The translations under genes and the position numbers were made by a program. From Eukaryota sp. TZLM1-RC (taxonomy: Eukaryota > Protista > Metamonada: BaSk clade): DNA of 64,000 bases. The DNA is taken from assembly GCA_040285825.1 (NCBI GenBank), contig JAUPSS010000005.1, positions 1,798,408-1,862,407 on the forward strand, read 5' to 3'. Numbering within the stretch: position 1 is the first letter of the stretch; every line of letters begins with the position of its first letter. Of this stretch, positions 3,601 through 64,000 are shown one piece after another. Under the pieces are notes generated by a model. It worked only from the letters and a program-made list of their open reading frames with translations. It was not told the DNA's origin and ran no database searches.

Positions 3601-4032
3601 GGAACCATATAAGAGCAAAAACTTTCGACGATAGCATGTATAATACAGAGGAGGTAAACAAAAAGAGTAACCCAAAGTTGGTATTGGATTCTACACTATA
3701 TAAAGAACATATCGTTGAAAGATGAAAACATCTACTGTACCCAGCTCTTGTATGATTTCAGGAAGGGTATGGACGAAACTGAAGTGTTGTGTTGAGTATG
3801 TTAGAACTAACACATTGACTAGCGGCTTAGCGAATTCCTTATATCAATGAAAAATTTAGAATAGAGCGAATGGTAGAGGTTTTATAACAAGTGGAGGACG
3901 TAGCTCATTCTGAACCAGAAGTATTAAACATATGAGAAAACAAAAGAAGCAAACACTACAATTTAGTGGGGATGACAAACCAACTTTCACCTTGTTTCAA
4001 ATCTTCACAATTGTTCTTTTTATTGTCAGATA

Positions 4033-44841: not shown

Positions 44842-45930
44842 TACCTGGTTGATCCTGCCAGTAGGCATATGCTTGTCTCAAAGATTAAGCCATGCATGTC
44901 TAAGTTCAGGAGTTTTCTCCGAAACAGCGAATGGCTCATTAAATCAGTGATAATTTATTTGATAGTACTTACTACTTGGATAACCGTGGTAATTCTAGAG
45001 CTAATACATGCAGCAAATACTTCTTTTGAAGTATGCATTTATTAGATACAAAACCAATCCTGGCAACAGGTCTTTGGTGAATCATAATAACTATGCTGAT
45101 CGCATGTCTTCGGACAGCGACATATCATTTAAATCACTGCCCTATCAACTAAATCGTAAGGTAGTGGCTTACGATGGTGATGACGGGTAACGGGGAATTA
45201 GGGTTTGATTCCGGAGAGGGAGCCTGAGAAATGGCTACCACATCCAAGGAAGGCAGCAGGCGCGAAAATTACCCAATCTCATTACGAGGAGGTAGTGACA
45301 AAAAATAACAATACTGGGCTCTTTTGAGTTCGTAATTGGAATGAGTACAACTTAAAACCTTTAACGAGGAGCTACTAGAGGGCAAGTCTGGTGCCAGCAG
45401 CCGCGGTAATTCCAGCTCTAGTAGTGTATCTTAAAATTGCTGCGTTTAAATCGTCCGTAGTTGAATCTCAGAATTTGCGTATCTTCAGGTTTTCCTGTTG
45501 GTAAACAGATTCTTCTGTCTGAGGACACTAGTCATTTGCTTCGGCGGTGGCTATTGAATTCAGACCGTTTACTTTGAAAAAATTAGAGTGTTCAAAGCAG
45601 GCTTTATGCAATTGAATAACTTAGCATGGAATAATAGAATAGGACTTTGGTTCTGTTTTATTGGTTTTGAGAACTAGAGTAATGATTAAAAGGGACAGTT
45701 GGGGGCATTAGTACTCCGGTGTCAGAGGTGAAATTCTTGGATTGCCGGATGACTAACTACTGCGAAAGCATTTGCCAAAGATGTTCTCATTAATCAAGGT
45801 CGAAAGTTGGGGGATCGAAGACGATTAGACACCGTCGTAGTCTCAACCATAAACTATGCCGACTAGGGATTAGTAGGCGTTAAATACGACCCTATTAGCA
45901 CCTTATGGGAAACCATAAGTTCTTGGGTAA

Positions 45931-45989
<59 letters not shown>

Positions 45990-46438
45990 TTGTGGAGCCT
46001 GCGGCTTAATCTGACTCAACACGGAGAAACTTACCAGGTCCAGACGTGATAAGGATTGACAGATTGATAGCTCTTTCATGATCTTACGGTTAGTGGCGCA
46101 TGGCCGTTCTTAGTTGGTGGAGTGATTTGTCTGGTTAATTCCGATAACGAACGAGATCTAAATTGCTAACTAGTTTTATTCTATTTTCGGATAGTTTGAA
46201 CTTCTTAGCGAGACTGCTGTGGTTTTACACAGAGGAAGGTTTAGGCAATAACAGGTCTGTGATGCCCTTAGATGTTCTGGGCCGCACGCGCGCTACAATG
46301 GTAGGTACAACGAGTTTGTCCTTAACCGAAAGGTTTGGGTAATCTTGTGAATACCTATCTTGACTGGGATAGATCCTTGCAATTATGGGTCTTGAACGAG
46401 GAATAACTTGTAAGTGCATGTCATCAGCATGCGCTGAA

Positions 46439-46484
<46 letters not shown>

Positions 46485-46624
46485 GATGTTGAGGTGAAAT
46501 GTTTGGACTCAATGGGTTAAGCTGCAAAGCAAGACTTGTTGGGAAAATTCAGTGAATCTTTGCATCTAGAGGAAGGAGAAGTCGTAACAAGGTATCCGTA
46601 GGTGAACCTGCGGATGGATCATTG
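44842..46624 (+). rRNA. 18S: 18S (SSU) rRNA
   Basis: TACCTGGTTGATCCTGCCAG start; GTGCCAGCAGCCGCGGTAA; GTACACACCGCCCGTC; GGTGAACCTGCGGATGGATCATT end. Confidence 0.99.
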
Positions 46625-46722: not shown

Positions 46723-46883
46723 CAACTTTCAGTGATGGATGTCTCGGCTCCTTTATCGATGAAGAACGCAGCGAATTGCGATACGTAATGTGAATTGCAG
46801 AATCTGTGAATCATCGAAACTTTGAACGCAAATGGTAGTTCTTTAGAGCTTCGGCTTTATTGAACTATACTTGAATCAGCGTC
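46723..46883 (+). rRNA. 5.8S: 5.8S rRNA (ITS1 ~98 nt, ITS2 ~160 nt)
   Basis: AACTTTCAGTGATGGATGTCTCGGCTC..GATGAAGAACGCAGCGAA..GAATTGCAGAA..CTTTGAACGCA. Confidence 0.95.
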
Positions 46884-47042
46884 GTCTTTTATTTTTCCAT
46901 TTCGGATAATTGGAATTGAAGGTTACTTCTTTTCTTAAATAATCAAATATATGATTGACTTTTGTCAACATTTATTGTTGAAGGCAACTTTTACATTAAT
47001 TGACGACTCATCTCTTTCATATATTGTCTTTTAGACATCATT

Positions 47043-47391
47043 TCGACCTGATTTCAAGTAAGATCACCCCCTGGACTTAAGCATATCAATAAGGGGAGGA
47101 AAAGAAAATAACTATGATTTCCTTAGTAGCGGCGAGCGAACAGGAAAAAGCTCAAGACTGAATCTTTATGATCTTTAGATTGTGAAGAGTTGTAGTCTAT
47201 GGAAACCAGTATTCGGTTCTCGATGTATAAGTCCTTTGGAAAAGGGTATCATGGAAGGTGAAAATCCTGTAAATGACATCGAAGTAATTGATTCACTACT
47301 GATTTTCCGAGAGTCGCGCTGTTTGGGAATGCAGCGTTAAATGTGGGGTAAGTTTCCCATAAAGCTAAATATAAAAGGAGACCGATAGTTC

Positions 47392-47422
<31 letters not shown>

Positions 47423-48263
47423 TCTGAAGAGAGAGTTAAAAGTACCTGAAATCACTGAAAGGATAAGCGATTGGAACTTGATATTGATAGCTTCGGCTGT
47501 CTTGCGTTGGAGTGATTTTGAAAATTGAGTGATTGTGGGGAAGGTAGCTATAATGAACTTCGGTTTATTGTAGTGTTATAGCCTCATAAATTGTTCTTTT
47601 TAAGAATCAGGAATACGGTTTTACCGAGACTCCAACATAAAAGGTTCAATTGTCCCGTCTTGAAACACGGACCAAGGAGTGTATCTCTTCTGCAAGTCGT
47701 AGGGTGTAAAAACCTGAAGGCGAAATGAAAGTAATTTTATGAGGGGAAGTTTCGACTGCACCCTCAACCAGTCCTTGCAAAGGGATCTGAGTATGAGCAG
47801 AATGGATACGACCCGAAAGCCGCTGAACTATGCCTGAATAGGATGAAGCCAGGGGAAACTCTGGTGGAAGTCCGTAGCGATGTTGACGTGCAAATCACTC
47901 GTCAAATTTGGGTATAGGGGCGAAAGACTCATCGAAGCGGCTAGTAGCTGGTTACGTTCGAAGTTTCCCCCAGGATAGCTGGAGCTTGTTTTAGTTTTGT
48001 CCGGTAAAGCTAATGATTAGAGGTACTAGGGACGCAATGTCCTTAGCCTATTCTCAAACTTTAAATGGGCAAGATTTGTGATGATACTTAAGTGATCGTT
48101 GCAATTGAATAATAGCTCTAAGTGGGCCATTTTTGGTAAGCAGAACTGGCGATGTGGGATGCTCCAAAAGACATGTTAAGGTGCCTAAGTGTGCACTCAT
48201 TTAGACCCCAGAAAAGGTGTTGGTTGATATTGACAGCAGGACGGTGGCCATGGAAGTCGGAAT

Positions 48264-48297
<34 letters not shown>

Positions 48298-49207
48298 TCA
48301 ACTAGCCCTGAAAATTGATGGCGCTAAAGTGTGCCACCTATACATGTCCATTAATTCATTTTATGAGTTAATGTGTAGAACGTCGTGGGGGTTGCGTAGA
48401 AGGTTCATTGTGAAATGGACTGGAGCAGCCTCTAGTGCAGATCTTGGTGGTAGTAGCAAATAAACAAGTTGGAATCTTGTTGACCGAAGTGGAGTAGGGT
48501 TCCATGGTAAAGGTATTCTGCCATGGGTTAGTCGGTCCTAAGGCACAGGTTAACTCTTTGAGAGGGGGCTTTTATAGCTCCGTCCTGTCGAAAGGGAAGC
48601 AGGTTAATATTCCTGCACCAACAGTGGGTGTTCGTGGTAACACAATCGAATCTAGAGATGTCGGGGAGGATCCTGGGAAGAGTTATCTTTTCTTATTAAC
48701 TGTCTATTGTCCATGGAATCTGTTTAACAGGAGAAGTGGATATAAGATAGGAAGAGCATTACGTTTTTGTAATGTCCGGTGTATTCTCAACGGCCCTTGA
48801 AAATCTAGAGGAGTAATCACTTCATTGTTGTCCGTACCGATAACCGCATCAGGTCTCCAAGGTGTGTAGCCTCTGGTCTATAGAAGAACGTAGGTAAGGG
48901 AAGTCGGCAAAATAGATCCGTAACTTCGGGATAAGGATTGGCTCTAGGGGCCTTGTGTAAGAGCCCTAGTGGTGACGCACTGAGCGTTGATGTGATTGGC
49001 AACAATTGCGTTGATGCGAGGTGTTGATCCATTGGGATTACTTTTATGCAATTAAAGGTCAACCTAGAACTGTAACGGACAAAGGGAACCCGACTGTTTA
49101 ATCGAAACAAAGCTTTCTGATGGCCGGAAACGGTGTTGACAGAAAGTGATTTCTGCTCAGTGCTCTGAATGTCATTGTGAAGAGATTCAATCAAGCACGG
49201 GTAAACA

Positions 49208-49252
<45 letters not shown>

Positions 49253-49253
49253 C

Positions 49254-49286
<33 letters not shown>

Positions 49287-49308
49287 GTTCCCACTGTCCC
49301 TACCTACC

Positions 49309-49344
<36 letters not shown>

Positions 49345-49350
49345 TAATTC

Positions 49351-49388
<38 letters not shown>

Positions 49389-49747
49389 TGATATTGTGAA
49401 CCGATTCAGGAGGTGTAGCGTACAGGGGAGTAGATTTATCTACGCCAATGAAACACCCTGACTCTTGACATTGGTTTGCTAACTTAATTAATCCGAAACA
49501 GGTTTCCTGTTTCAAGATTTAAGTGTCTTCGGATACGATCGGATTTAAGGACATTGTCAGATGGGGAGTTTGGCTGGGGCGGCACATCTCCAAAATAATA
49601 ACGGAGGTGTCCTAAGGTGAGCTCAATGAGAACAGAAATCTCATGTAGAACATAAGGGTAAAAGCTCACTTGATTTTGATTTTCAGTATGAATACAAACC
49701 AAGAAATTGTGGCCTAACGATCCTTTAACTATAAGAAACTTTTAGCT

Positions 49748-49790
<43 letters not shown>

Positions 49791-49892
49791 AGCCAAGCGT
49801 TCATAGCGACGTTGCTTTTTGATTCTTCGATGTCGGCTCTTCCTATCATTGAGAAGCAGAATTCTCAAAGCGTTGGATTGTTCACCCATTAA

Positions 49893-49948
<56 letters not shown>

Positions 49949-50345
49949 AATAATTGTCATCCTAATAGTAAAGCAACCCAGTACGAGAGGAACCGTTGTT
50001 TCGCATAATTGGTATTTACGCTTATCTGAAAAGATATTGGTGTGAAGCTAACATGCGTTGGATTATAGCTGAACGCCTCTAAGCTAGTATCCAACCTAGA
50101 AAGGATGATATATTGACCTGCAAATTTAATCGATAAAGATTAGGATTGTGTTTACACAGTCCCAATATCTCATCAGTGGGATTGATGTTTAGTCTAAGTA
50201 CTATTCATTGATCATTGAAACTATGAAGATTCGCAGGATCATGAAACCTTGGCAGACGACCAAGATACGGAACTCATTGCTGTAAGTGTAAGAGTATGGT
50301 TTTTATACGATTTACTGAGGCTCATATGAAGTTCCTAGTTTCGTA
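47043..50345 (+). rRNA. 28S: 28S (LSU) rRNA, uninterrupted
   Basis: ACCCCCTGGACTTAAGCATAT; CCGTCTTGAAACACGGACC; empty R2 site TTAAGGTAGCC (~49229-49239); sarcin-ricin loop AGTACGAGAGGAAC; terminal helix GTAAG..AGAGTA..TACGAT..CTGAG. Ends are approximate. Confidence 0.98.
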
Positions 50346-53300
50346 TATTGACCAATGGTTGTTTATTACAATCATTGGTCAAATCTTTAAAGTCCATTTT
50401 GGGACAATTAATATAACAATTGTGGTGTTAAAGTCCGTGCTATGGTCATTTGATTAGTCATTGGTATGATTGGTTGAATGGTCATTGGTATGATTAGATG
50501 AGTTGCATGTAGTCTTTATGTACTAGATGTGATCAACTTGTGATCAAACTTTGTGTGAAATTGTGTGTTAGTAATGTTGGCTATGTGTTACTTGATCAGT
50601 ACAAACTCATGATTACATTTTCAAATGATTTTGTATATATTTGAATTAATTGAGTGTATTAATTTTTAAACATTAAATTGTAAAAAAAGTAAAAAATCAA
50701 AAAGTATACAATTGAATGTTGTAAACTAATAAAACAATTGCTGTAAGTGTAAGAGTATCGTTTTTGATACGATTTACTGAGGCTCATATGAAGTTCCTAG
50801 TTTCGTATATTGACCAATGGTTGTTTATTACAATCATTGGTCAAATCTTTAAAGTCCATTTTGGGACAATTAATATAACAATTGTGGTGTTAAAGTCCGT
50901 GCTATGGTCATTTGATTAGTCATTGGTATGATTGGTTGAATGGTCATTGGTATGATTAGATGAGTTGCATGTAGTCTTTATGTACTAGATGTGATCAACT
51001 TGTGATCAAACTTTGTGTGAAATTGTGTGTTAGTAATGTTGGCTATGTGTTACTTGATCAGTACAAACTCATGATTACATTTTCAAATGATTTTGTATAT
51101 ATTTGAATTAATTGAGTGTATTAATTTTTAAACATTAAATTGTAAAAAAGTAAAAATCAAAAAGTATACAATTGAATGTTGTAAACTAATAAAACAATTG
51201 CTGTAAGTGTAAGAGTATCGTTTTTGATACGATTTACTGAGGCTCATATGAAGTTCCTAGTTTCGTATATTGACCAATGGTTGTTTATTACAATCATTGG
51301 TCAAATCTTTAAAGTCCATTTTGGGACAATTAATATAACAATTGTGGTGTTAAAGTCCGTGCTATGGTCATTTGAGTAGTCATTGGTATGATTGGTTGAA
51401 TGGTCATTGGTATGATTAGATGAGTTGCATGTAGTCTTTATGTACTAGATGTGATCAACTTGTGATCAAACTTTGTGTGAAATTGTGTGTTAGTAATGTT
51501 GGCTATGTGTTACTTGATCAGTACAAACTCATGATTACATTTTCAAATGATTTTGTATATATTTGAATTAATTGAGTGTATTAATTTTTAAACATTAAAT
51601 TGTAAAAAAAGTGAAAAATCAAAGTATACAATTGAATGTTGTAAACTAATAAAACAATTGCTGTAAGTGTAAGAGTATCGTTTTTGATACGATTTACTGA
51701 GGCTCATATGAAGTTCCTAGTTTCGTATATTGACCAATGGTTGTTTATTACAATCATTGGTCAAATCTTTAAAGTCCATTTTGGGACAATTAATATAACA
51801 ATTGTGGTGTTAAAGTCCGTGCTATGGTCATTTGATTAGTCATTGGTATGATTGGTTGAATGGTCATTGGTATGATTAGATGAGTTGCATGTAGTCTTTA
51901 TGTACTAGATGTGATCAACTTGTGATCAAACTTTGTGTGAAATTGTGTGTTAGTAATGTTGGCTATGTGTTACTTGATCAGTACAAACTCATGATTACAT
52001 TTTCAAATGATTTTGTATATATTTGAATTAATTGAGTGTATTAATTTTTAAACATTAAATTGTAAAAAAAGTAAAAAATCAAAAAGTATACAATTGAATG
52101 TTGTAAACTAATAAAACAATTGCTGTAAGTGTAAGAGTATCGTTTTTGATACGATTTACTGAGGCTCATATGAAGTTCCTAGTTTCGTATATTGACCAAT
52201 GGTTGTTTATTACAATCATTGGTCAAATCTTTAAAGTCCATTTTGGGACAATTAATATAACAATTGTGGTGTTAAAGTCCGTGCTATGGTCATTTGATAG
52301 TCATTGGTATGATTGGTTGAATGGTCATTGGTATGATTAGATGAGTTGCATGTAGTCTTTATGTACTAGATGTGATCAACTTGTGATCAAACTTTGTGTG
52401 AAATTGTGTGTTAGTAATGTTGGCTATGTGTTACTTGATCAGTACAAACTCATGATTACATTTTCAAATGATTTTGTATATATTTGAATTAATTGAGTGT
52501 ATTAATTTTTAAACATTAAATTGTAAAAAAGTAAAAAATCAAAAAGTATACAATTGAATGTTGTAAACTAATAAAACAATTGCTGTAAGTGTAAGAGTAT
52601 CGTTTTTGATACGATTTACTGAGGCTCATATGAAGTTCCTAGTTTCGTATATTGACCAATGGTTGTTTATTACAATCATTGGTCAAATCTTTAAAGTCCA
52701 TTTTGGGACAATTAATATAACAATTGTGGTGTTAAAGTCCGTGCTATGGTCATTTGATAGTCATTGGTATGATTGGTTGAATGGTCATTGGTATGATTAG
52801 ATGAGTTGCATGTAGTCTTTATGTACTAGATGTGATCAACTTGTGATCAAACTTTGTGTGAAATTGTGTGTTAGTAATGTTGGCTATGTGTTACTTGATC
52901 AGTACAAACTCATGATTACATTTTCAAATGATTTTGTATATATTTGAATTAATTGAGTGTATTAATTTTTAAACATTAAATTGTAAAAAAGTAAAAATCA
53001 AAAAGTATACAATTGAATGTTGTAAACTAATAAAACAATTGCTGTAAGTGTAAGAGTATCGTTTTTGATACGATTTACTGAGGCTCATATGAAGTTCCTA
53101 GTTTCGTATATTGACCAATGGTTGTTTATTACAATCATTGGTCAAATCTTTAAAGTCCATTTTGGGACAATTAATATAACAATTGTGGTGTTAAAGTCCG
53201 TGCTATGGTCATTTGATTAGTCATTGGTATGATTGGTTGAATGGTCATTGGTATGATTAGATGAGTTGCATGTAGTCTTTATGTACTAGATGTGATCAAC

Positions 53301-55209
53301 TTGTGATCAAACTTTGTGTGAAATTGTGTGTTAGTAATGTTGGCTATGTGTTACTTGATCAGTACAAACTCATGATTACATTTTCAAATGATTTTGTATA
53401 TATTTGAATTAATTGAGTGTATTAATTTTTAAACATTAAATTGTAAAAAAGTAAAAATCAAAAAGTATACAATTGAATGTTGTAAACTAATAAAACAATT
53501 GCTGTAAGTGTAAGAGTATCGTTTTTGATACGATTTACTGAGGCTCATATGAAGTTCCTAGTTTCGTATATTGACCAATGGTTGTTTATTACAATCATTG
53601 GTCAAATCTTTAAAGTCCATTTTGGGACAATTAATATAACAATTGTGGTGTTAAAGTCCGTGCTATGGTCATTTGATAGTCATTGGTATGATTGGTTGAA
53701 TGGTCATTGGTATGATTAGATGAGTTGCATGTAGTCTTTATGTACTAGATGTGATCAACTTGTGATCAAACTTTGTGTGAAATTGTGTGTTAGTAATGTT
53801 GGCTATGTGTTACTTGATCAGTACAAACTCATGATTACATTTTCAAATGATTTTGTATATATTTGAATTAATTGAGTGTATTAATTTTTAAACATTAAAT
53901 TGTAAAAAAGTAAAAATCAAAAAGTATACAATTGAATGTTGTAAACTAATAAAACAATTGCTGTAAGTGTAAGAGTATCGTTTTTGATACGATTTACTGA
54001 GGCTCATATGAAGTTCCTAGTTTCGTATATTGACCAATGGTTGTTTATTACAATCATTGGTCAAATCTTTAAAGTCCATTTTGGGACAATTAATATAACA
54101 ATTGTGGTGTTAAAGTCCGTGCTATGGTCATTTGATTAGTCATTGGTATGATTGGTTGAATGGTCATTGGTATGATTAGATGAGTTGCATGTAGTCTTTA
54201 TGTACTAGATGTGATCAACTTGTGATCAAACTTTGTGTGAAATTGTGTGTTAGTAATGTTGGCTATGTGTTACTTGATCAGTACAAACTCATGATTACAT
54301 TTTCAAATGATTTTGTATATATTTGAATTAATTGAGTGTATTAATTTTTAAACATTAAATTGTAAAAAAAGTAAAAAATCAAAAAGTATACAATTGAATG
54401 TTGTAAACTAATAAAACAATTGCTGTAAGTGTAAGAGTATCGTTTTTGATACGATTTACTGAGGCTCATATGAAGTTCCTAGTTTCGTATATTGACCAAT
54501 GGTTGTTTATTACAATCATTGGTCAAATCTTTAAAGTCCATTTTGGGACAATTAATATAACAATTGTGGTGTTAAAGTCCGTGCTATGGTCATTTGATTA
54601 GTCATTGGTATGATTGGTTGAATGGTCATTGGTATGATTAGATGAGTTGCATGTAGTCTTTATGTACTAGATGTGATCAACTTGTGATCAAACTTTGTGT
54701 GAAATTGTGTGTTAGTAATGTTGGCTATGTGTTACTTGATCAGTACAAACTCATGATTACATTTTCAAATGATTTTGTATATATTTGAATTAATTGAGTG
54801 TATTAATTTTTAAACATTAAATTGTAAAAAAAGTAAAAAATCAAAAAGTATACAATTGAATGTTGTAAACTAATAAAACAATTGCTGTAAGTGTAAGAGT
54901 ATCGTTTTGATACGATTTACTGAGGCTCATATGAAGTTCCTAGTTTCGTATATTGACCAATGGTTGTTTATTACAATCATTGGTCAAATCTTTAAAGTCC
55001 ATTTTGGGACAATTAATATAACAATTGTGGTGTTAAAGTCCGTGCTATGGTCATTTGATTAGTCATTGGTTGAATGGTCATTGGTATGATTAGATGAGTT
55101 GCATGTAGTCTTTATGTACTAGATGTGATCAACTTGTGATCAAACTTTGTGTGAAATTGTGTGTTAGTAATGTTGGCTATGTGTTACTTGATCAGTACAA
55201 ACTCATGAT
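50276..55209 (+). repeat. ~10.7 copies of the 461-bp spacer repeat
   Basis: Same unit; the first copy overlaps the 28S 3' end; the last is cut at AACTCATGAT by the retroelement. Confidence 0.97.
50348..50382 (+). terminator. 15-bp 3'ETS hairpin, candidate RNase III-type processing/termination signal (repeated in every spacer unit)
   Basis: TTGACCAATGGTTGT-TTATT-ACAATCATTGGTCAA immediately after the 28S end. Confidence 0.55.
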
Positions 55210-55239
55210 GTCCTATCTCCCTGTTCCCACCGCCATTGT

Positions 55240-58200
55240 ATGAGGCAGACATCTCTTACAGGGTTTTTTATGCCCTCAAAGTCTCAACCTTCTTTATCTC
55301 CTTCAGAATTCTCTTCTCTTTTGGAAGGTCTAGAAGAGTCCAACATGACTGCCGATGTCAGCGGCATCGAGCAGAATAGCCCTAGTGCTATAGAGCTGTC
55401 CGTGGCAGATTCTCATGAATCTGGCCGAAATCTAGTGTTGGCTTCTTCCTATGACCAAACTCCACATTTATATGCGGAAGATAAGTCCTCTTTCTCCATT
55501 TCACAACTTACCTCTGATGACCCACCCACTTCCTCCGATCAACTTTGCACTGACCCTTCCTCAGATTCTTTCAATCACATTTCTCCAATCTCCGTTTCAG
55601 ACGCTACTGAATTCTCTCTTCAAACAGCGCACTCTGATCCAGATAGTTCTCACCTTGCAACTCCATATGATAGTTATCAGCGCTCACCTGGTCTAGTGGA
55701 TAAGACCTTTGACTCAGAGGTTGCGGTCCTGAGTTCGAATCCCACCACACGCACATTGTCTAGTGCCTCTCCATTGGGAGGTGCTAATTCCAGCGATTCT
55801 CGTAGTGAGCTTCGGCTCGCTACAAATAACCACTGTGGTGGGAAGGGGGGTTTTTGCTCTGTGTCCCTTTGTGATGATCCCCTCTCTGCTGATCTCCAAA
55901 ATTTAGACCAAATTTCAGGTGTTTGTCAAAATCGTAGAGAAAGAAAGTTCTGCTGCTTTGTCTCGCTCTGCCCCAGAACTGAACCGTTCTCTAAGCGGTC
56001 TGGGTTGACAAGGCATTTGATGAAAATGCATCCTGATGTCAGCCTTGATGTCTTAAAAGCCAATGGATACACAAGATGTAGCTGCTCTGACATCATTTCT
56101 GTAGAAGGCATCGGGATGCATATAACTAAGAAAGGTTGTGCATTTTCTCTCAGTGAATCTGTCAATAATTCAGAGAGTCCTCTTCTTCCTTCTGAGGACT
56201 CTCCTATTCAATTGTACCATCAACCGATTAACCCAAGCCAACGTTATGGTCTTGGGTTTGGGTATCAACAGGGCCCTCTTGTGACTGAACCTGTTCGAGA
56301 TATTTCACATCCACCTGTTTGTCCTTCTGACCTTGATAGTTCTCCTGTTGTCTCTTTTGATGCCAATGATGATGGTGATGAATCTAATCCAATCATACTT
56401 CCTGATGACGATGGCCACATACTTGAATCGAATGCTTCCTCTGATATGGATGTTAATGTGAATCCCTTGGAGATTTACACAGATGGATCTTTTCTCAAGA
56501 AAAGAAATAAATCTGGCTTTGGGGGCTTTTATACTTTCAAGGATAAGCGATTCGAAATTTATGGCCCATCACGCCACAACACCCATAACGCAGCTGAGTT
56601 TGAAGCTGTTTTGATGACCATTAAATCCTTAGTGTTGCTCTCTCACTGTCCACAACACATTATCATTTTTTCTGACAGTAGCCTTGTTGTTGATTCTCTT
56701 AACCTAAAAGCATCCCTAAAGAATCCTACTGTCAAAAGAATCCGCAGCCAAATAAAGGATCTCATAAATAGTTCTCGTTTTAGACTATTCTCCTTCTCCT
56801 TTAAGAAAGTGTTGGCACATTCTGACAATACCAATAATAATGTTGCTGATGTTTTAGCAAAACGTGGCGCTAATGGCTCTGAATGTTCACTGCTGAAGTA
56901 TTTAAGAACACGTTATCATGTCCTTGAAGGCCCTATACCACTTTGTTCATTACCACCTGACCACTGTGAACACATTGCTGATAGTGATCCCCTTGACTCG
57001 TCCATTTTAGAAAAATCACACAATTGTCCTATCTGTCCCAGTTTCTTTTCCAAAGCAAGATCCTTATGCTGCCATATTGATACGCACCACTCCTCTATAG
57101 ACACTGACACATTACACATTAATAATCTGGTTCGCTGCCCAGTTTGCTTGAAGGTATTCTCATCGGTTGGTTTTGACAACCATTTCAAACGTCATGAGTC
57201 ACCGACTCTAGATATGCCCTGTATTTCTGATTCTTTATTTATTCAGCTGAGCAATGAAATTGCAAGCTTCACTTACAAACGGCTCAGTGATCGTCCCTCA
57301 TTCCGCTCTGCAGTCAAGTTGGTCACCCATTCTTCCCTGCCAATGGAACAAAAATGTAGATATCTTCTAGTGCTACCGGTAGTTTGCCTAAAGCTGGACA
57401 AAGGCTCATCACTTTTTAAACTTTTCCGATTCCAACACAGGGTTCACAAATTTAATATTGGTCAATGCGAAGATACTTCTTCCTTCTTTTGTAACACAAC
57501 CCCCATCAGACCACATACATTTAGCAATCGAGTCAATATAAAGAGAGTCAAAGAACTTATTCACGACAACGAACTGAGTCGCGCTATGAATCTGCTATCA
57601 AGAGAACCACCAACAGCAAACATAACTAATAACTCCATGCTAGAGCAATTGCAACACCTCCATCCAGCTGATCCAAATTTTTGTCAATATAACAATATGC
57701 TAACTGAACACTACTCCTACCACGACTCCTCTTCCGTAGCTGACGCAATCCTTAATTCCCCTATGACGGAAGGTGGCCCCTCCCACTGGCATGCCAAACT
57801 TTTGAAACAGTGTATTGATGACCACTTGGTGTCATGTGTACAGTATATAGCAAACGGCCTGCTCAGTGGCAAAATAAGTGAGCCCCTCAGACGTGTTCTC
57901 ACTTCCAGTAGATTGCTCGCCATCCCAAAGAAAAGTAATGGAGTGCGGCCCTTGGCAGTTGGAGAACTATTTTACCGCATTGCTGCCGGCCTTGCGCTAT
58001 CTAAAGTAAATGTTGACTATTTGATCAATTCAAATCAATATGGCGTGAAAGTCCCTGGTGGTGGTGAAGCTATTGTCCATTCAATTCGTAGTAATCTAGG
58101 CCTATCTTTCGAAAAACTGATCAAGTTTGATGTGCGCAATGCATTCAATGAGGTCGATCGTTGTCAGCTTGCCCAAGCTGTTGCTGAATATTGTCCTTTG

Positions 58201-59742
58201 CTGTTCCCATTCTTTAAAGCTAGCTATCTGAGCCCTTCCACATTACATTTTAGAAACTCAGTTATTTTCTCAGAACGTGGTGTTCGACAAGGCGATCCCC
58301 TCGGTCCCTTGCTATTTTCAACTGCCCTTGTCCCGTTTACAACACAGCTCCGTACCCTGCACCCATCCTGTCATTTTTATTTGTATTTAGATGACCTCTT
58401 TGTTCTTTGCAACGACCATGAAACTGATGCTATTGTTGGGACTGTTTCAAGCTTTATCCAAGACATTGGTCTTGAAGTCAATCTTGACAAAACTGCTGTT
58501 GTCTCTAGCAATGACAATTTCGAGGTGCTTGGTGCACATTTTGGCCCAAACGCCGAAGATGATCTTTCAAGCTCACTCCCACCAATGACTAGTTCTCTGT
58601 TGAAATGTCTCGAATCGCTGACGTTACAAGAGCAATTGCTTCTTGTGAGACACTGCATCAACACCAAACTGTCCTTTCATGCACGTGTTCATCGCCCAGC
58701 AGTCAGCAAGAATCCCCTCATTAGTTGTTTTCATCAAATAGTTTCTTTTGTTTCTTCGGCACTTGGGGTTGTTCCTTTGTTTCCTCAGTTGATTTCTCTC
58801 CCGTCAGCCAGATTTGGAGGACTCGGTCTCACAAATTATGGGGAAATAGCTCATTTGTGCTTCGCAGCCTCCTACATCACCAGCAATAGGACTTTAAACC
58901 TCTTCCACTCTTCATTGCCACTTGATGATTTAGATCTTATGTGCGCTGAATCATTATTTCATGAACTTGGTACAGCTACCAACTCCCCCAACTTATCAAA
59001 ACTTCAAGCTCTCTTAACTCAAAACCACTTTTTGGAGACTCTGAATTCTTTGACTAGGGACTTTAGATCCAAGCCTGCTGTACTCGCTTCATTTAGGTCG
59101 CCGGTAACTGACCCAGCCATAGCACCCATCCCAATCAAATATGAAAACGACGTTCTAATCAATTGCAAACCACTGTCTCAATCACTTTTATTTATCAATC
59201 CATCTGAGGAACCTGTTGACGATTCATTGCTCAAGTATTTCTTAAGAACCCGCCTCCTCTGTTCTGAATTTGTACATCACTGTCCCTTTTGTAAACATGA
59301 ATCCAATTCTCAGTATCATTCAGCCAATTGCGAACAACTATCATCTATGCGAATTAGAAGACATGATGATGTGGTTGAATTGATATCGCAACTGACAGGC
59401 TTACTCAAAGAACAGAACGTAGGTAACGGCAGAGTTGACCTTATTCGTCCCGATGGCAGCGAGTGTTATGACCTCACTTTAGTCGGTGGATATTCTACCC
59501 CTCTCAATACACTGATTGAACGCCGTAGAATGTCGAAAATTGGTAAATATTCTCACCATGTTCCTTTGGTTCCACTAATCGCATTTCCTTCTGGAGGCAT
59601 CGAACGAAGTTTTGTAAATTTTTTGCGTAAAAAAGAGATAGGCTCTTATGGGAAAAAAATATCGCTGTCATTTATAAGATCATGCTTTAAAATGAGCAAA
59701 GTGTATGCCCGACTTGCCATTTGTGATCTTAGTGATGATTGA
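55240..59742 (+). CDS. Retrotransposon polyprotein: PIP box - ZnF - RNase H - 2x C2H2 - RT - zinc knuckle - RLE (1500 aa)
   Basis: QTSLTGFF; IYTDGS/AAEFEA/FSDS/AHS..N..AD; LQHLHP, GVRPLAVGE, QYGV..GGEAIVH, DVRNAFN, GVRQGDPLGPLLF, YLDD, GGLG; CPFC..H...C, RRHD, RVDL..D..K..KY. Confidence 0.95.
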   Translation: MRQTSLTGFFMPSKSQPSLSPSEFSSLLEGLEESNMTADVSGIEQNSPSAIELSVADSHESGRNLVLASSYDQTPHLYAEDKSSFSISQLTSDDPPTSSDQLCTDPSSDSFNHISPISVSDATEFSLQTAHSDPDSSHLATPYDSYQRSPGLVDKTFDSEVAVLSSNPTTRTLSSASPLGGANSSDSRSELRLATNNHCGGKGGFCSVSLCDDPLSADLQNLDQISGVCQNRRERKFCCFVSLCPRTEPFSKRSGLTRHLMKMHPDVSLDVLKANGYTRCSCSDIISVEGIGMHITKKGCAFSLSESVNNSESPLLPSEDSPIQLYHQPINPSQRYGLGFGYQQGPLVTEPVRDISHPPVCPSDLDSSPVVSFDANDDGDESNPIILPDDDGHILESNASSDMDVNVNPLEIYTDGSFLKKRNKSGFGGFYTFKDKRFEIYGPSRHNTHNAAEFEAVLMTIKSLVLLSHCPQHIIIFSDSSLVVDSLNLKASLKNPTVKRIRSQIKDLINSSRFRLFSFSFKKVLAHSDNTNNNVADVLAKRGANGSECSLLKYLRTRYHVLEGPIPLCSLPPDHCEHIADSDPLDSSILEKSHNCPICPSFFSKARSLCCHIDTHHSSIDTDTLHINNLVRCPVCLKVFSSVGFDNHFKRHESPTLDMPCISDSLFIQLSNEIASFTYKRLSDRPSFRSAVKLVTHSSLPMEQKCRYLLVLPVVCLKLDKGSSLFKLFRFQHRVHKFNIGQCEDTSSFFCNTTPIRPHTFSNRVNIKRVKELIHDNELSRAMNLLSREPPTANITNNSMLEQLQHLHPADPNFCQYNNMLTEHYSYHDSSSVADAILNSPMTEGGPSHWHAKLLKQCIDDHLVSCVQYIANGLLSGKISEPLRRVLTSSRLLAIPKKSNGVRPLAVGELFYRIAAGLALSKVNVDYLINSNQYGVKVPGGGEAIVHSIRSNLGLSFEKLIKFDVRNAFNEVDRCQLAQAVAEYCPLLFPFFKASYLSPSTLHFRNSVIFSERGVRQGDPLGPLLFSTALVPFTTQLRTLHPSCHFYLYLDDLFVLCNDHETDAIVGTVSSFIQDIGLEVNLDKTAVVSSNDNFEVLGAHFGPNAEDDLSSSLPPMTSSLLKCLESLTLQEQLLLVRHCINTKLSFHARVHRPAVSKNPLISCFHQIVSFVSSALGVVPLFPQLISLPSARFGGLGLTNYGEIAHLCFAASYITSNRTLNLFHSSLPLDDLDLMCAESLFHELGTATNSPNLSKLQALLTQNHFLETLNSLTRDFRSKPAVLASFRSPVTDPAIAPIPIKYENDVLINCKPLSQSLLFINPSEEPVDDSLLKYFLRTRLLCSEFVHHCPFCKHESNSQYHSANCEQLSSMRIRRHDDVVELISQLTGLLKEQNVGNGRVDLIRPDGSECYDLTLVGGYSTPLNTLIERRRMSKIGKYSHHVPLVPLIAFPSGGIERSFVNFLRKKEIGSYGKKISLSFIRSCFKMSKVYARLAICDLSDD
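55682..55855 (+). ncRNA. Putative Pol III tRNA-like structured RNA embedded in the retrotransposon ORF
   Basis: A box TGGTCTAGTGG (55689), B box GAGTTCGAATC (55731), three-way junction with a UUCG hairpin, TTTTT at 55851-55855. Confidence 0.5.
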
Positions 59743-59794
59743 TCGCTTTAGTTATAGTTTCTTCATTGTGATTGAACATTTCTTTCTTTAATAA

Positions 59795-60196
59795 ACTGAA
59801 TAATTGTCATCCTAATAGTAAAGCAACCCAGTACGAGAGGAACCGTTGTTTCGCATAATTGGTATTTACGCTTATCTGAAAAGATATTGGTGTGAAGCTA
59901 ACATGCGTTGGATTATAGCTGAACGCCTCTAAGCTAGTATCCAACCTAGAAAGGATGATATATTGACCTACAAATTTAATCGATAAAGATTAGGATTGTG
60001 TTTACACAGTCCCAATATCTCATCAGTGGGATTGATGTTTAGTCTAAGTACTATTCATTGATCATTGAAACTATGAAGATTCGCAGGATCATGAAACCTT
60101 GGTAGACGACCAAGATACGGAACTCATTGCTGTAAGTGTAAGAGTATCGTTTTTGATACGATTTACTGAGGCTCATATGAAGTTCCTAGTTTCGTA
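59795..60196 (+). rRNA. 28S: Partial 28S rRNA (3'-terminal ~400 nt only)
   Basis: Duplicate of 49945-50345 with 4 visible differences. Confidence 0.95.
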
Positions 60197-63100
60197 TATT
60201 GACCAATGGTTGTTTATTACAATCATTGGTCAAATCTTTAAAGTCCATTTTGGGACAATTAATATAACAATTGTGGTGTTAAAGTCCGTGCTATGGTCAT
60301 TTGAGTAGTCATTGGTATGATTGGTTGAATGGTCATTGGTATGATTAGATGAGTTGCATGTAGTCTTTATGTACTAGATGTGATCAACTTGTGATCAAAC
60401 TTTGTGTGAAATTGTGTGTTAGTAATGTTGGCTATGTGTTACTTGATCAGTACAAACTCATGATTACATTTTCAAATGATTTTGTATATATTTGAATTAA
60501 TTGAGTGTATTAATTTTTAAACATTAAATTGTAAAAAAGTAAAAAATCAAAAGTATACAATTGAATGTTGCAAACTAATAAAACAATTGCTGTAAGTGTA
60601 AGAGTATCGTTTTGATACGATTTACTGAGGCTCATATGAAGTTCCTAGTTTCGTATATTGACCAATGGTTGTTTATTACAATCATTGGTCAAATCTTTAA
60701 AGTCCATTTTGGGACAATTAATATAACAATTGTGGTGTTAAAGTCCGTGCTATGGTCATTTGATTAGTCATTGGTATGATTGGTTGAATGGTCATTGGTA
60801 TGATTAGATGAGTTGCATGTAGTCTTTATGTACTAGATGTGATCAACTTGTGATCAAACTTTGTGTGAAATTGTGTGTTAGTAATGTTGGCTATGTGTTA
60901 CTTGATCAGTACAAACTCATGATTACATTTTCAAATGATTTTGTATATATTTGAATTAATTGAGTGTATTAATTTTTAAACATTAAATTGTAAAAAAGTA
61001 AAAAATCAAAAGTATACAATTGAATGTTGTAAACTAATAAAACAATTGCTGTAAGTGTAAGAGTATCGTTTTTGATACGATTTACTGAGGCTCATATGAA
61101 GTTCCTAGTTTCGTATATTGACCAATGGTTGTTTATTACAATCATTGGTCAAATCTTTAAAGTCCATTTTGGGACAATTAATATAACAATTGTGGTGTTA
61201 AAGTCCGTGCTATGGTCATTTGATTAGTCATTGGTATGATTGGTTGAATGGTCATTGGTATGATTAGATGAGTTGCATGTAGTCTTTATGTACTAGATGT
61301 GATCAACTTGTGATCAAACTTTGTGTGAAATTGTGTGTTAGTAATGTTGGCTATGTGTTACTTGATCAGTACAAACTCATGATTACATTTTCAAATGATT
61401 TTGTATATATTTGAATTAATTGAGTGTATTAATTTTTAAACATTAAATTGTAAAAAAGTAAAAAATCAAAAAGTATACAATTGAATGTTGTAAACTAATA
61501 AAACAATTGCTGTAAGTGTAAGAGTATCGTTTTTGATACGATTTACTGAGGCTCATATGAAGTTCCTAGTTTCGTATATTGACCAATGGTTGTTTATTAC
61601 AATCATTGGTCAAATCTTTAAAGTCCATTTTGGGACAATTAATATAACAATTGTGGTGTTAAAGTCCGTGCTATGGTCATTTGATTAGTCATTGGTATGA
61701 TTGGTTGAATGGTCATTGGTATGATTAGATGAGTTGCATGTAGTCTTTATGTACTAGATGTGATCAACTTGTGATCAAACTTTGTGTGAAATTGTGTGTT
61801 AGTAATGTTGGCTATGTGTTACTTGATCAGTACAAACTCATGATTACATTTTCAAATGATTTTGTATATATTTGAATTAATTGAGTGTATTAATTTTTAA
61901 ACATTAAATTGTAAAAAAAGTAAAAAATCAAAAAGTATACAATTGAATGTTGTAAACTAATAAAACAATTGCTGTAAGTGTAAGAGTATCGTTTTGATAC
62001 GATTTACTGAGGCTCATATGAAGTTCCTAGTTTCGTATATTGACCAATGGTTGTTTATTACAATCATTGGTCAAATCTTTAAAGTCCATTTTGGGACAAT
62101 TAATATAACAATTGTGGTGTTAAAGTCCGTGCTATGGTCATTTGATTAGTCATTGGTATGATTGGTTGAATGGTCATTGGTATGATTAGATGAGTTGCAT
62201 GTAGTCTTTATGTACTAGATGTGATCAACTTGTGATCAAACTTTGTGTGAAATTGTGTGTTAGTAATGTTGGCTATGTGTTACTTGATCAGTACAAACTC
62301 ATGATTACATTTTCAAATGATTTTGTATATATTTGAATTAATTGAGTGTATTAATTTTTAAACATTAAATTGTAAAAAAGTAAAAAATCAAAAGTATACA
62401 ATTGAATGTTGTAAACTAATAAAACAATTGCTGTAAGTGTAAGAGTATCGTTTTGATACGATTTACTGAGGCTCATATGAAGTTCCTAGTTTCGTATATT
62501 GACCAATGGTTGTTTATTACAATCATTGGTCAAATCTTTAAAGTCCATTTTGGGACAATTAATATAACAATTGTGGTGTTAAAGTCCGTGCTATGGTCAT
62601 TTGATTAGTCATTGGTATGATTGGTTGAATGGTCATTGGTATGATTAGATGAGTTGCATGTAGTCTTTATGTACTAGATGTGATCAACTTGTGATCAAAC
62701 TTTGTGTGAAATTGTGTGTTAGTAATGTTGGCTATGTGTTACTTGATCAGTACAAACTCATGATTACATTTTCAAATGATTTTGTATATATTTGAATTAA
62801 TTGAGTGTATTAATTTTTAAACATTAAATTGTAAAAAAGTAAAAAATCAAAAAGTATACAATTGAATGTTGTAAACTAATAAAAACAATTGCTGTAAGTG
62901 TAAGAGTATCGTTTTTGATACGATTTACTGAGGCTCATATGAAGTTCCTAGTTTCGTATATTGACCAATGGTTGTTTATTACAATCATTGGTCAAATCTT
63001 TAAAGTCCATTTTGGGACAATTAATATAACAATTGTGGTGTTAAAGTCCGTGCTATGGTCATTTGATTAGTCATTGGTATGATTGGTTGAATGGTCATTG

Positions 63101-64000
63101 GTATGATTAGATGAGTTGCATGTAGTCTTTATGTACTAGATGTGATCAACTTGTGATCAAACTTTGTGTGAAATTGTGTGTTAGTAATGTTGGCTATGTG
63201 TTACTTGATCAGTACAAACTCATGATTACATTTTCAAATGATTTTGTATATATTTGAATTAATTGAGTGTATTAATTTTTAAACATTAAATTGTAAAAAA
63301 GTAAAAATCAAAAGTATACAATTGAATGTTGTAAACTAATAAAACAATTGCTGTAAGTGTAAGAGTATCGTTTTGATACGATTTACTGAGGCTCATATGA
63401 AGTTCCTAGTTTCGTATATTGACCAATGGTTGTTTATTTCAATCATTGGTCAAATCTTTAAAGTCCATTTTGGGACAATTAATATAACAATTGTGGTGTT
63501 AAAGTCCGTGCTATGGTCATTTGATTAGTCATTGGTATGATTGGTTGAATGGTCATTGGTATGATTAGATGAGTTGCATGTAGTCTTTATGTACTAGATG
63601 TGATCAACTTGTGATCAAACTTTGTGTGAAATTGTGTGTTAGTAATGTTGGCTATGTGTTACTTGATCAGTACAAACTCATGATTACATTTTCAAATGAT
63701 TTTGTATATATTTGAATTAATTGAGTGTATTAATTTTTAAACATTAAATTGTAAAAAAGTAAAAAATCAAAAAGTATACAATTGAATGTTGTAAACTAAT
63801 AAAACAATTGCTGTAAGTGTAAGAGTATCGTTTTGATACGATTTACTGAGGCTCATATGAAGTTCCTAGTTTCGTATATTGACCAATGGTTGTTTATTAC
63901 AATCATTGGTCAAATCTTTAAAGTCCATTTTGGGACAATTAATATAACAATTGTGGTGTTAAAGTCCGTGCTATGGTCATTTGAGTAGTCATTGGTATGA
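60126..64000 (+). repeat. >8 copies of the 461-bp spacer repeat (runs off window end)
   Basis: Same unit as the other arrays. Confidence 0.97.

What the first reader, a model, noticed from the sequence alone, without database searches (positions are those of the whole stretch)
56467..56872. Complete RNase H domain placed N-terminal to the RT, between zinc fingers
Seen: IYTDGS..SGFGG, NAAEFEA, IFSDSSLVV and KVLAHSDNTNNNVADVLAKRGA supply the full D-E-D-H-D set. It lies after a C2H2/CCHC pair and before two more C2H2 fingers and the RT. Known: where non-LTR elements carry RNase H (I group, some L1, oomycete Utopia) it normally follows the RT, and R2/CRE elements typically lack it. The decayed CRE-like element at 14.5-17.9 kb shows no such domain in the same position. 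Inference: an independent RNase H capture into the DNA-binding region, perhaps to clear Pol I R-loops at the rDNA target or to remove template for second-strand synthesis.
Basis: partly seen in the sequence, partly recalled or inferred. Interest (0 to 1): 0.85.

Follow-up and report, generated by a model that had tools for sequence, protein, structure and literature searches.

The report
RNase H upstream of RT in rDNA retrotransposon
An intact jumping gene that targets one spot in the 28S ribosomal RNA gene of the protist Skoliomonas carries a real, conserved RNase H domain in front of its reverse transcriptase instead of behind it, an order known so far only from one oomycete element group.

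Summary
Window 56467-56871 encodes a complete type-1 RNase H domain: Pfam PF00075 E 6e-17, AlphaFold pLDDT 94.8, top fold matches cellular RNase HI. The catalytic residues D415, E453, D479, H527 and D537 are all present.

It sits in one intact 1500-aa ORF (55240-59742) of a 4.6-kb non-LTR retrotransposon with a restriction-like endonuclease (RLE). The order is ZnF pair, RNase H, ZnF pair, RT, CCHC, RLE. The element joins 28S rDNA about 36 nt upstream of the sarcin-ricin loop. The genome is Skoliomonas litria TZLM1-RC.

Three families, 41-46% identical in protein and spread over two Skoliomonas species, share this order, the catalytic residues and the same 28S site. The RNase H domains form one clade (99/99), so it was probably acquired once and kept under selection.

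Kojima and Jurka (2015) place it upstream of the RT and call that position unique. Here the domain is H-type, not the archaeal-like R-type. I also found a second metagenomic RLE lineage with upstream RNase H.

Its origin is unresolved; the host RNase H1 type is mildly favoured. Function (template RNA removal) is inferred. The scan noted the same architecture on other pieces of this genome. Verdict: a new variant of a known kind.

The parts
55210..59794 (+). Full-length RLE-type non-LTR retrotransposon (family A), 4585 nt
   Evidence: Self-BLAST limits. The same 5' terminus GTCCTATCTCCC follows two different upstream flanks. The 3' end abuts 28S sequence.
55210..55239 (+). Short 5' untranslated leader (30 nt)
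   Evidence: No Rfam ribozyme or other RNA family was found in 54900-59900 at E<=1.
55240..59742 (+). Single intact ORF, 1500 aa
   Evidence: The other family A copies examined (L003, L005) carry 1-2 nt indels.
55240..55929 (+). Low-complexity Ser/Pro-rich N-terminal region (aa 1-230), weakly constrained
   Evidence: pN/pS is about 1.6, and other copies carry 13-nt and 24-nt insertions and 2-nt deletions here. The region is absent from the gene models P0002-P0004.
55954..56139 (+). First zinc-finger pair: C2H2 (aa 239-264) and CxC-H-C (aa 280-300)
   Evidence: Pattern search, conserved in P0004 of GEM-RC1. Weak Pfam C2H2_ASCIZ hit at aa 237-264.
56467..56871 (+). RNase H domain (aa 410-544). 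Catalytic codons: D415 56482-56484, E453 56596-56598, D479 56674-56676, H527 56818-56820, D537 56848-56850
   Evidence: Pfam PF00075 E 6e-17. NCBIfam rnhA-type model is the best match. AF2 pLDDT 94.8 with the beta1-3/alphaA/beta4/alphaB/alphaD/beta5/alphaE order. Foldseek top hits are cellular RNase HI at probability 1.0. Conserved in three families.
57025..57195 (+). Second zinc-finger pair: two C2H2 fingers (aa 596-617 and 633-652)
   Evidence: The Cys and His residues are invariant in all family members. RNase H-less relatives have fingers at the equivalent distance from the RT.
57517..58944 (+). RT with its N-terminal extension and thumb (aa 760-1235); Pfam RVT_1 core at aa 895-1100 (57922-58539); YLDD at aa 1049
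59230..59733 (+). C-terminal CCHC (aa 1348-1364) plus restriction-like endonuclease (RHD..E..RxD..D.T..K..KY)
   Evidence: Alignment with RLE relatives. RLE profile score 165.7, E 6e-51.
59743..59794 (+). Short 3' UTR with no poly(A) tail
59795..60196 (+). Target flank: the last 402 nt of 28S rRNA, starting at the equivalent of window 49945 (ACCCT^ACTGA). The sarcin-ricin loop AGTACGAGAGGAAC begins 36 nt downstream of the junction.
   Evidence: The same junction follows family B (L001) and other family A copies (L003, L005). The decayed family C copy (L002) is also followed by this 28S fragment, with detectable similarity starting 17 nt further in.

Best explanation
Shown: the stretch is the RNase H domain of an intact, single-ORF, RLE-type non-LTR retrotransposon of Skoliomonas litria. 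The element inserts at one site of the 28S rRNA gene, about 36 nt upstream of the sarcin-ricin loop. The domain is a cellular-type (type 1, D-E-D-H-D) RNase H lying upstream of the RT. Its order (ZnF pair, RNase H, ZnF pair, RT, CCHC-RLE), its catalytic residues and its target site are shared by three families that are only 41-46% identical and occur in two Skoliomonas species. The RNase H domains of these families form one clade.

Inferred: one ancestral capture of a cellular RNase H gene, possibly the host's own RNase H1 catalytic domain without its hybrid-binding domains, has been kept by purifying selection since then. The most likely role is the one RNase H has in other retroelements. After the RLE nicks the 28S target and the RT copies the element RNA by target-primed reverse transcription, the RNase H degrades the RNA strand of the RNA:cDNA hybrid. 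That would let second-strand synthesis proceed without depending only on strand displacement or on host RNase H. The upstream position implies either that it reaches the hybrid through the long linker holding the second finger pair, or that it acts from a second protein subunit bound at the target. Neither route was tested.
For: Domain identity and fold. The reading frame from the RNase H through the ZnF pair, RT and RLE is intact in family A (window) and in family B (L001 ORF 3887-7468). The same order and catalytic residues occur in P0003 and in P0004, P0024 and P0025. RNase H identity of 44-48% is at least as high as the 41-46% over the rest of the protein. Within family A, pN/pS in the RNase H is 0.14-0.19, against 0.08-0.25 in the RT. 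The RNase H domains are monophyletic at 99/99. The 28S junction is identical in families A and B (49945), and the decayed family C copy is followed by the same 28S fragment. Cellular origin: nearly all of the top 150 of 1.84 billion representatives are short stand-alone proteins, the two long exceptions checked carry no RT, and the best PDB and NCBIfam matches are bacterial rnhA-type. Host link: the tree that holds the element RNase H together with host RNase H1 P0054 (GEMRC1_008876, two HBD domains plus RNase H) has a log-likelihood 16 units higher than the free tree. An independent search joins them at UFBoot 91. R2-type elements are described as lacking RNase H and relying on strand displacement (PMC12203849 and PMC13586686).
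Against: The pN/pS values rest on only 5-6 substitutions per comparison. The region between alphaB and alphaD is about 6 residues shorter than in the Chlorobium and E. coli enzymes. The basic protrusion that helps substrate binding is therefore reduced, which could lower stand-alone activity. The upstream position has no structural model showing how the domain would reach the nascent hybrid. The RNase H tree is unstable: three searches gave three different sister groups, so the donor is not established. The host keeps an RNase H1, so the element does not obviously need its own.
Confidence: 0.62

Rival explanations
1. The RNase H acts on the target rather than on the element's own template. It would resolve Pol I R-loops, or RNA:DNA hybrids at the transcribed 28S site, so that the zinc fingers and RLE can reach duplex DNA.
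For: The domain is embedded between the DNA-binding finger pairs rather than next to the RT. All three families target a site inside a heavily transcribed gene.
Against: There is no direct evidence. Oomycete Utopia targets U2 snRNA genes and the metagenomic P0233 lineage shows no rDNA flank, yet both also carry an upstream RNase H, so an rDNA-specific reason is not needed. R2, R1 and other 28S-specific elements manage without an upstream RNase H.
Confidence: 0.15
2. The domain is kept as a nucleic-acid-binding or structural module, for example to grip the element RNA or the hybrid, and its nuclease activity is irrelevant or lost.
For: The basic-protrusion region is shortened. R2-type RTs can displace RNA without RNase H.
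Against: All five catalytic residues and the other nearly invariant RNase H columns are retained in three families at 44-48% identity. They are also retained in the independent P0233/P0272 lineage. That pattern is what selection on catalysis predicts.
Confidence: 0.12
3. The upstream RNase H is an ancestral feature of a wider RLE clade, shared with the metagenomic P0233/P0272 lineage and perhaps with Utopia, and was lost many times. On this reading it is not a separate capture in Skoliomonas.
For: The AU test does not reject one clade for the Skoliomonas and P0233 RNase H domains (p 0.18). Both are D-E-D-H-D and both lie upstream of the RT.
Against: The RT tree places the two lineages apart, with many RNase H-less lineages between them, and the AU test rejects their RT monophyly (p 0.022). 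In the RNase H trees P0233 pairs with a different stand-alone protein, P0152, at 98/90. Utopia's RNase H is archaeal-like with R in place of H, whereas this one scores higher on PF00075 than on PF13456 and has H527.
Confidence: 0.1
4. Artefact: a chimeric ORF created by mis-assembly, or by a chance fusion of a host RNase H gene fragment with a retrotransposon in this one copy.
For: The rDNA arrays are repetitive and other copies show small indels that may be assembly errors.
Against: The same in-frame order is present in several copies on five other contigs of this genome. It is also present in a 41%-identical family and in a second species' assembly.
Confidence: 0.01

Closest known systems
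Oomycete Utopia (RLE-type non-LTR retrotransposons; Kojima and Jurka 2015, PMC4640811; Ustyantsev et al. 2017, PMC5348765)
   Same: Single ORF with N-terminal zinc fingers, an RNase H domain upstream of the RT, a C-terminal ZF plus RLE, and strict targeting of a multicopy RNA gene. The RNase H was captured from a cellular gene.
   Different: Utopia targets U2 snRNA genes, not 28S. Its RNase H is 'archaeal-like' with R at the H position. Here H527 is present, PF00075 outscores PF13456 (62.5 against 37.7 bits) and the best matches are rnhA-type. The host is a metamonad, not an oomycete. No direct sequence comparison with Utopia could be run.
R2 and other 28S-specific RLE elements (R2Bm, R2Tg and others)
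   Same: Single ORF, N-terminal zinc fingers, RT, CCHC plus RLE, precise 3' junction in 28S rDNA, no poly(A). R2 proteins in the PDB are weak RT hits (E 3e-4 to 3e-2).
   Different: R2 is described as lacking any RNase H. The insertion site here is about 400 nt from the 28S 3' end, next to the sarcin-ricin loop, not the R2 site (from my own knowledge of R2; not compared here). No Myb motif was identified. The RT is only distantly similar.
I-group, plant and oomycete L1, and Dualen/RandI non-LTR elements with RNase H
   Same: A cellular-type RNase H domain recruited into a non-LTR retrotransposon polyprotein.
   Different: In those elements the RNase H lies downstream of the RT, and most use an APE endonuclease. 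One such RT-then-RNase H protein, P0262, appeared among distant hits and does not group with this domain.
Metagenomic RLE lineage P0233/P0267/P0272
   Same: RLE-type element with a D-E-D-H-D RNase H upstream of the RT, kept in members that are 52% identical.
   Different: Its RNase H is at the extreme N-terminus with no zinc fingers detected, and in L011 it sits in a separate abutting ORF. It falls in a different RT clade. It comes from AT-rich contigs with no rDNA flank.
Cellular RNase HI/H1 (E. coli rnhA type; eukaryotic RNase H1 such as GEMRC1_008876)
   Same: Same fold, same five catalytic residues, and full-length match to the rnhA profile. The best-likelihood trees place it beside the host RNase H1.
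   Different: It has no hybrid-binding (Cauli_VI) domain and the alphaC/basic-protrusion region is shortened. It is embedded in a 1500-aa retrotransposon protein. Its score is far below the NCBIfam equivalog cut-off (45 against 160 bits).

Membership tests
RNase H type 1 (Pfam PF00075) | Profile match above the curated cut-off over the whole domain | tested here: met
   62.5 bits against a cut-off of 25.8, profile positions 4-140 of 141.
RNase H type 1 (Pfam PF00075) | Catalytic D-E-D-(H)-D residues | tested here: met
   D415, E453, D479, H527 and D537 align to the invariant or nearly invariant columns and to E. coli D10, E48, D70, H124 and D134.
RNase H type 1 (Pfam PF00075) | RNase H fold (five-stranded sheet with alphaA-alphaE) | tested here: met
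   AF2 pLDDT 94.8. Foldseek probability 1.0 and TM 0.65-0.83 to RNase HI of Chlorobium, Sulfolobus, Halobacterium and E. coli.
RNase H type 1 (Pfam PF00075) | Cleavage of RNA in RNA:DNA hybrids | not testable with these tools
   Needs a biochemical assay.
RLE-type (R2/CRE/NeSL-group) non-LTR retrotransposon | Single ORF with an RT followed by CCHC and a PD-(D/E)xK restriction-like endonuclease; no APE domain | tested here: met
   RVT_1 at aa 895-1100. CCHC plus RLE motifs at aa 1348-1498 align with relatives. No Exo_endo_phos hit.
RLE-type (R2/CRE/NeSL-group) non-LTR retrotransposon | N-terminal zinc-finger DNA-binding motifs | tested here: met
   Four finger patterns at aa 239-652.
RLE-type (R2/CRE/NeSL-group) non-LTR retrotransposon | Sequence-specific insertion into a multicopy gene | tested here: met
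   The 3' junction is at the same 28S nucleotide in the window, L001, L003 (x1) and L005 (x2). L002 is followed by the same 28S fragment from 17 nt further in.
Utopia clade | Insertion into U2 snRNA genes | tested here: not met
   The target is 28S rDNA.
Utopia clade | Archaeal-like RNase H with R replacing the catalytic-site H (oomycete members) | tested here: not met
   H527 is present and PF00075 outscores PF13456. The criterion comes from PMC4640811.
Utopia clade | RT groups with Utopia references | not testable with these tools
R2 clade | Insertion at the canonical R2 site of 28S, and no RNase H | tested here: not met
   The site is about 400 nt from the 28S 3' end, next to the sarcin-ricin loop. 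That the R2 site lies elsewhere in 28S is from my own knowledge, not a comparison made here. An RNase H is present. R2 reviews state that R2 has none.
   The target is not a spliced-leader gene. RT placement could not be tested without references. In the RT tree of database hits the family is a separate deep branch.

The most novel reading that the evidence does not exclude
Placing an RNase H upstream of the RT, at the DNA-binding end of the protein, is a solution that RLE-type retrotransposons have reached at least three separate times: in oomycete Utopia, in the Skoliomonas 28S elements, and in the metagenomic P0233/P0272 lineage. Each time a different cellular RNase H was used. This would point to a mechanistic need specific to RLE-type target-primed reverse transcription. 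For example, the RNA may have to be removed at the target-bound subunit so that second-strand synthesis can start, something a C-terminal RNase H next to the RLE cannot do. In Skoliomonas the donor would be the host's own RNase H1.
Probability: 0.3. Interest if true: 0.65.

Novelty: new variant of a known kind. Interest (0 to 1): 0.55.

Why it matters
R2-type elements are now being engineered for site-specific gene insertion, and reviews list the lack of RNase H, and the resulting reliance on strand displacement, as a core property. Natural RLE elements that have added a conserved, apparently active RNase H at the N-terminal end show that this architecture tolerates one. They also offer a test of whether RNA removal limits second-strand synthesis.

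The order was described as unique to oomycete Utopia. Finding it with a different RNase H type in a metamonad rDNA element, and again in an uncultured lineage, turns a curiosity into a recurring pattern. The family also defines a conserved 28S target next to the sarcin-ricin loop in a deep-branching eukaryote group whose mobile elements, as far as I could find, have not been described.

Tried and rejected
- Word-indexed search with the RNase H part against long proteins found only the paralogue P0002, so it gave no retroelement reference set.
- ESM Atlas feature search gave only generic RVT_1 clusters.
- A JGI metagenome scan with the RNase H plus ZnF alignment found no further members of the Skoliomonas family. 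A second scan with P0233 returned only its own contig.
- An Rfam scan of the element at E<=1 found no ribozyme or other RNA family.
- A literature search for the target-site string returned only unrelated primer matches. Three other literature searches found no RLE element with upstream RNase H other than Utopia.
- The AU test on the 149-row RNase H tree did not finish, one script call returned nothing and one IQ-TREE run timed out. I used a 51-row subset instead.
- 'Host lacks RNase H1, so the element must bring its own' is rejected for GEM-RC1, which has a two-HBD RNase H1.
- 'LTR-retroelement-derived RNase H' is rejected: there were no RT_RNaseH-type Pfam hits and no RT-bearing proteins among the top hits.
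- I first read the RNase H tree as excluding a host origin. The constrained search showed that the free search had missed a better tree, so I withdrew that reading.
- Classification to CRE, NeSL, R2 or Utopia by RT phylogeny could not be done because no reference sequences were available.
Full report
**What is there**

The window holds one complete rDNA unit: SSU at 44842-46624, 5.8S at 46724-46884 and LSU at 47044-50344. It is flanked by long arrays of a 460-bp spacer repeat. Inside the downstream array lies a 4585-nt insert at 55210-59794. The insert contains one uninterrupted ORF of 1500 aa at 55240-59742. Its 3' end is joined to the last 402 nt of 28S. That 28S fragment starts at the equivalent of position 49945 (ACCCT^ACTGA), 36 nt upstream of the sarcin-ricin loop sequence AGTACGAGAGGAAC. 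Its 5' end is joined to spacer repeat.

Near-identical proteins are annotated in 'Eukaryota sp. TZLM1-RC'. The flanking rDNA and spacer are 99-100% identical to loci of assembly GCA_040285825.1. TZLM1-RC is the type strain of Skoliomonas litria, a free-living anaerobic metamonad (PMC11603281). That the window comes from this genome is inferred from these identities.

**The observation**

The quoted motifs are all present. Pfam RNase_H (PF00075) matches aa 410-544, which is nt 56467-56871, over profile positions 4-140 of 141. The E-value is 6.4e-17 for the domain alone. RVT_3, the archaeal-like model, is weaker at 2e-9. The NCBIfam rnhA-type 'ribonuclease HI' model is the best of its library and matches end to end, though far below its equivalog cut-off. 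The best solved relative by sequence is Chlorobium tepidum RNase HI (3h08, E 1e-8), followed by E. coli RNase HI.

An AlphaFold2 model built on a 60-sequence alignment has mean pLDDT 94.8 and the canonical strand and helix order. Foldseek returns cellular RNase HI structures at probability 1.0. The catalytic residues are D415, E453, D479, H527 and D537, and all other nearly invariant columns of the alignment are also kept. The stretch between alphaB and alphaD is about 6 residues shorter than in the Chlorobium and E. coli enzymes, so the basic protrusion is reduced (my reading).

RVT_1 lies at aa 895-1100, and CCHC plus RLE at aa 1331-1498. Finger patterns lie at aa 239-264, 280-300, 596-617 and 633-652. 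A six-frame scan finds no other RNase H in the window.

**It is a family feature, not an accident**

The database holds three diverged families with the same order:
- Family A is the window copy, with P0002, P0022 and P0023 at 90-99% identity.
- Family B is P0003, 41% identical, in the same genome.
- Family C is P0004, P0024 and P0025, 45-48% identical, in Skoliomonas sp. GEM-RC1.

Family B has its own intact ORF running from the RNase H through the RLE (L001 3887-7468). RNase H identity between families (44-48%) is at least as high as that of the rest of the protein, and all five catalytic residues are retained. Within family A, pN/pS is 0.14-0.19 in the RNase H, against 0.08-0.25 in the RT and 0.09-0.24 in the finger and linker region. 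These values rest on few substitutions. The window copy is the only family A copy examined without frameshifts.

Families A and B join 28S at exactly the same nucleotide. The decayed family C copy is followed by the same 28S fragment, detectable from 17 nt further in. The RNase H domains of the three families form one clade, with support of 98 to 99/99. The simplest reading is a single acquisition before the families split, maintained by selection in a lineage with a fixed target site.

**Where the RNase H came from**

Scoring the domain against 1.84 billion representatives gave the family itself, then a gap to E 2e-9. Below that gap came almost only short stand-alone proteins, some named ribonuclease HI. 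Of the two long hits, neither carries an RT. This does not fit inheritance from an I-group, L1 or LTR retroelement RNase H.

One hit, P0054, is the GEM-RC1 host RNase H1, with two hybrid-binding domains plus RNase H. The trees are unstable. A 149-row quick tree and a 51-row careful tree gave different sister groups. When the element domains and P0054 were held together, the log-likelihood was 16 units higher than that of the free tree (AU p 0.85). An independent LG+F+G4 search then joined them with two short proteins at UFBoot 91. Capture of a host-type RNase H1 catalytic domain is therefore mildly favoured but not established. Shared composition and long branches could contribute to this grouping.

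**Comparison with what is known**

Kojima and Jurka (2015) state that all oomycete Utopia families encode RNase H upstream of the RT. They call that position unique, and report that the domain is archaeal-like with R in place of the catalytic-site H (PMC4640811). Ustyantsev et al. (2017) confirm the organisation (PMC5348765). Recent R2 reviews state that R2 lacks RNase H and relies on strand displacement (PMC12203849 and PMC13586686). I found no other report of an RLE element with an upstream RNase H.

The Skoliomonas domain differs from Utopia's in three ways: it has H527, it prefers PF00075 over PF13456, and its target is 28S rather than U2. Independent acquisition is likely. A direct sequence comparison could not be run because no Utopia sequences were available.

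**A further lineage**

A profile search with the ZnF-RT-RLE part returned 87 relatives. Apart from the Skoliomonas proteins, only two carry RNase H.
- P0262 has the RNase H downstream of the RT.
- P0233 (1547 aa, JGI metagenome 3300009684) has a D-E-D-H-D RNase H at aa 39-201, the RT at 847-1024 and an RLE at 1349-1520.

An identical-length protein, P0267, lies on a second contig. A 52%-identical relative, P0272, has the RNase H in a separate ORF that abuts the RT ORF, again with the catalytic residues intact.

In the RT tree this lineage sits in a different clade from the Skoliomonas family, with RNase H-less lineages in between. The AU test rejects uniting the two lineages (p 0.022). For the RNase H itself a common clade is not rejected (p 0.18), but P0233 pairs with a different stand-alone protein at 98/90. 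Many RNase H-less relatives have 400-1300 aa of N-terminal sequence, so their lack of RNase H is not due to truncation. These relatives carry one or two fingers at the distance from the RT where the second finger pair lies here. The RNase H plus the first finger pair may therefore be an N-terminal addition rather than an insertion into a finger array.

**How it most likely works**

By analogy with other retroelement RNase H domains, the most likely role is to degrade the RNA of the RNA:cDNA hybrid made by target-primed reverse transcription. That would free the cDNA for second-strand synthesis. This is inference. How an upstream domain reaches the hybrid is open: it might do so through the conserved linker of about 215 aa that holds the second finger pair, or from a second subunit bound at the target. 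The R-loop-clearing idea is not excluded, but it is not needed, because two lineages with no rDNA link (Utopia, which targets U2, and the P0233 lineage) have the same arrangement. A purely structural role fits poorly with conservation of every catalytic residue. An assembly artefact is excluded by the independent copies and the second species.

**Verdict**

This is a new variant of a known kind: a second, and with P0233 a third, RLE lineage with RNase H upstream of the RT. It uses an H-type cellular RNase H, in a 28S-specific element family of a metamonad. First readers of this scan noted the same architecture on other pieces of this genome. I used those notes only as leads.

Noticed in passing
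window 55100-55240; L003 2205-2320 and 9555-9670; L005 4865-4980: The element's 5' terminus (GTCCTATCTCCC...) is identical in all copies, but it follows spacer repeat at two different repeat phases (window against L003/L005). No copy has 28S sequence upstream. Copies form arrays of [element, 402 nt of 28S 3' end, 5-7 spacer repeats]. The SSU to 28S part of the unit is missing each time.
   Followed up: partly
L001 3537-3985 against window 55868-56310: Family B is only 41% identical in protein from the RNase H onward. Yet its 5' part, the first zinc-finger region, is 93% identical in DNA to family A. That suggests recombination or template switching between families. In L001 this part is broken by frameshifts and stops.
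   Followed up: partly
window 14577-17035 (minus strand) and 178-459 (minus strand): There are decayed remnants of distantly related RLE-type elements. RT similarity is 24-28% at 15622-17035 and there is an RLE remnant at 14577-14879. A separate RT fragment at 178-459 is 37% identical. No RNase H was detectable in either.
   Followed up: partly
L007 (JGI 3300009684, Ga0114958_10011704) and L011 (ENA ERZ27280172 k141_390646): An undescribed RLE retrotransposon lineage from AT-rich uncultured eukaryote contigs has an N-terminal D-E-D-H-D RNase H. In L011 the RNase H is a separate ORF (539-1561) that abuts the RT ORF (1561-4962).
   Followed up: yes
P0054 (GEMRC1_008876, Skoliomonas sp. GEM-RC1): The host RNase H1 has two Cauli_VI hybrid-binding domains and a C-terminal RNase H. 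In the best-likelihood trees it is a candidate relative of the element's domain.
   Followed up: partly
L008 6001-6981 (Logan SRR14739082 contig): P0028 is a 326-aa RNase H protein that was sister to the element's domain in one tree. It lies among densely packed orphan genes and ankyrin-repeat genes, a context that could be a giant virus or an intracellular bacterium.
   Followed up: no
window 50203-55209 and 60126-64000: Each 460-bp spacer repeat contains a copy of the last ~70 nt of 28S (the equivalent of 50276-50345), so the 28S 3' end is reiterated throughout the spacer.
   Followed up: no
window 55240-55929: The first 230 codons of the ORF are Ser/Pro-rich and low in complexity. Between copies pN/pS is about 1.6, and other copies carry 13-nt and 24-nt insertions and 2-nt deletions here. 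The annotated gene models omit this part, so the true start codon may lie further downstream.
   Followed up: partly
L002 (GEM-RC1 contig JAUFOQ010000012.1): In GEM-RC1 the rDNA spacer carries a 5S rRNA gene. The family C copy there is broken into three ORFs and is followed by a 28S 3' fragment only 80% identical to the functional 28S, so it is an old insertion.
   Followed up: no
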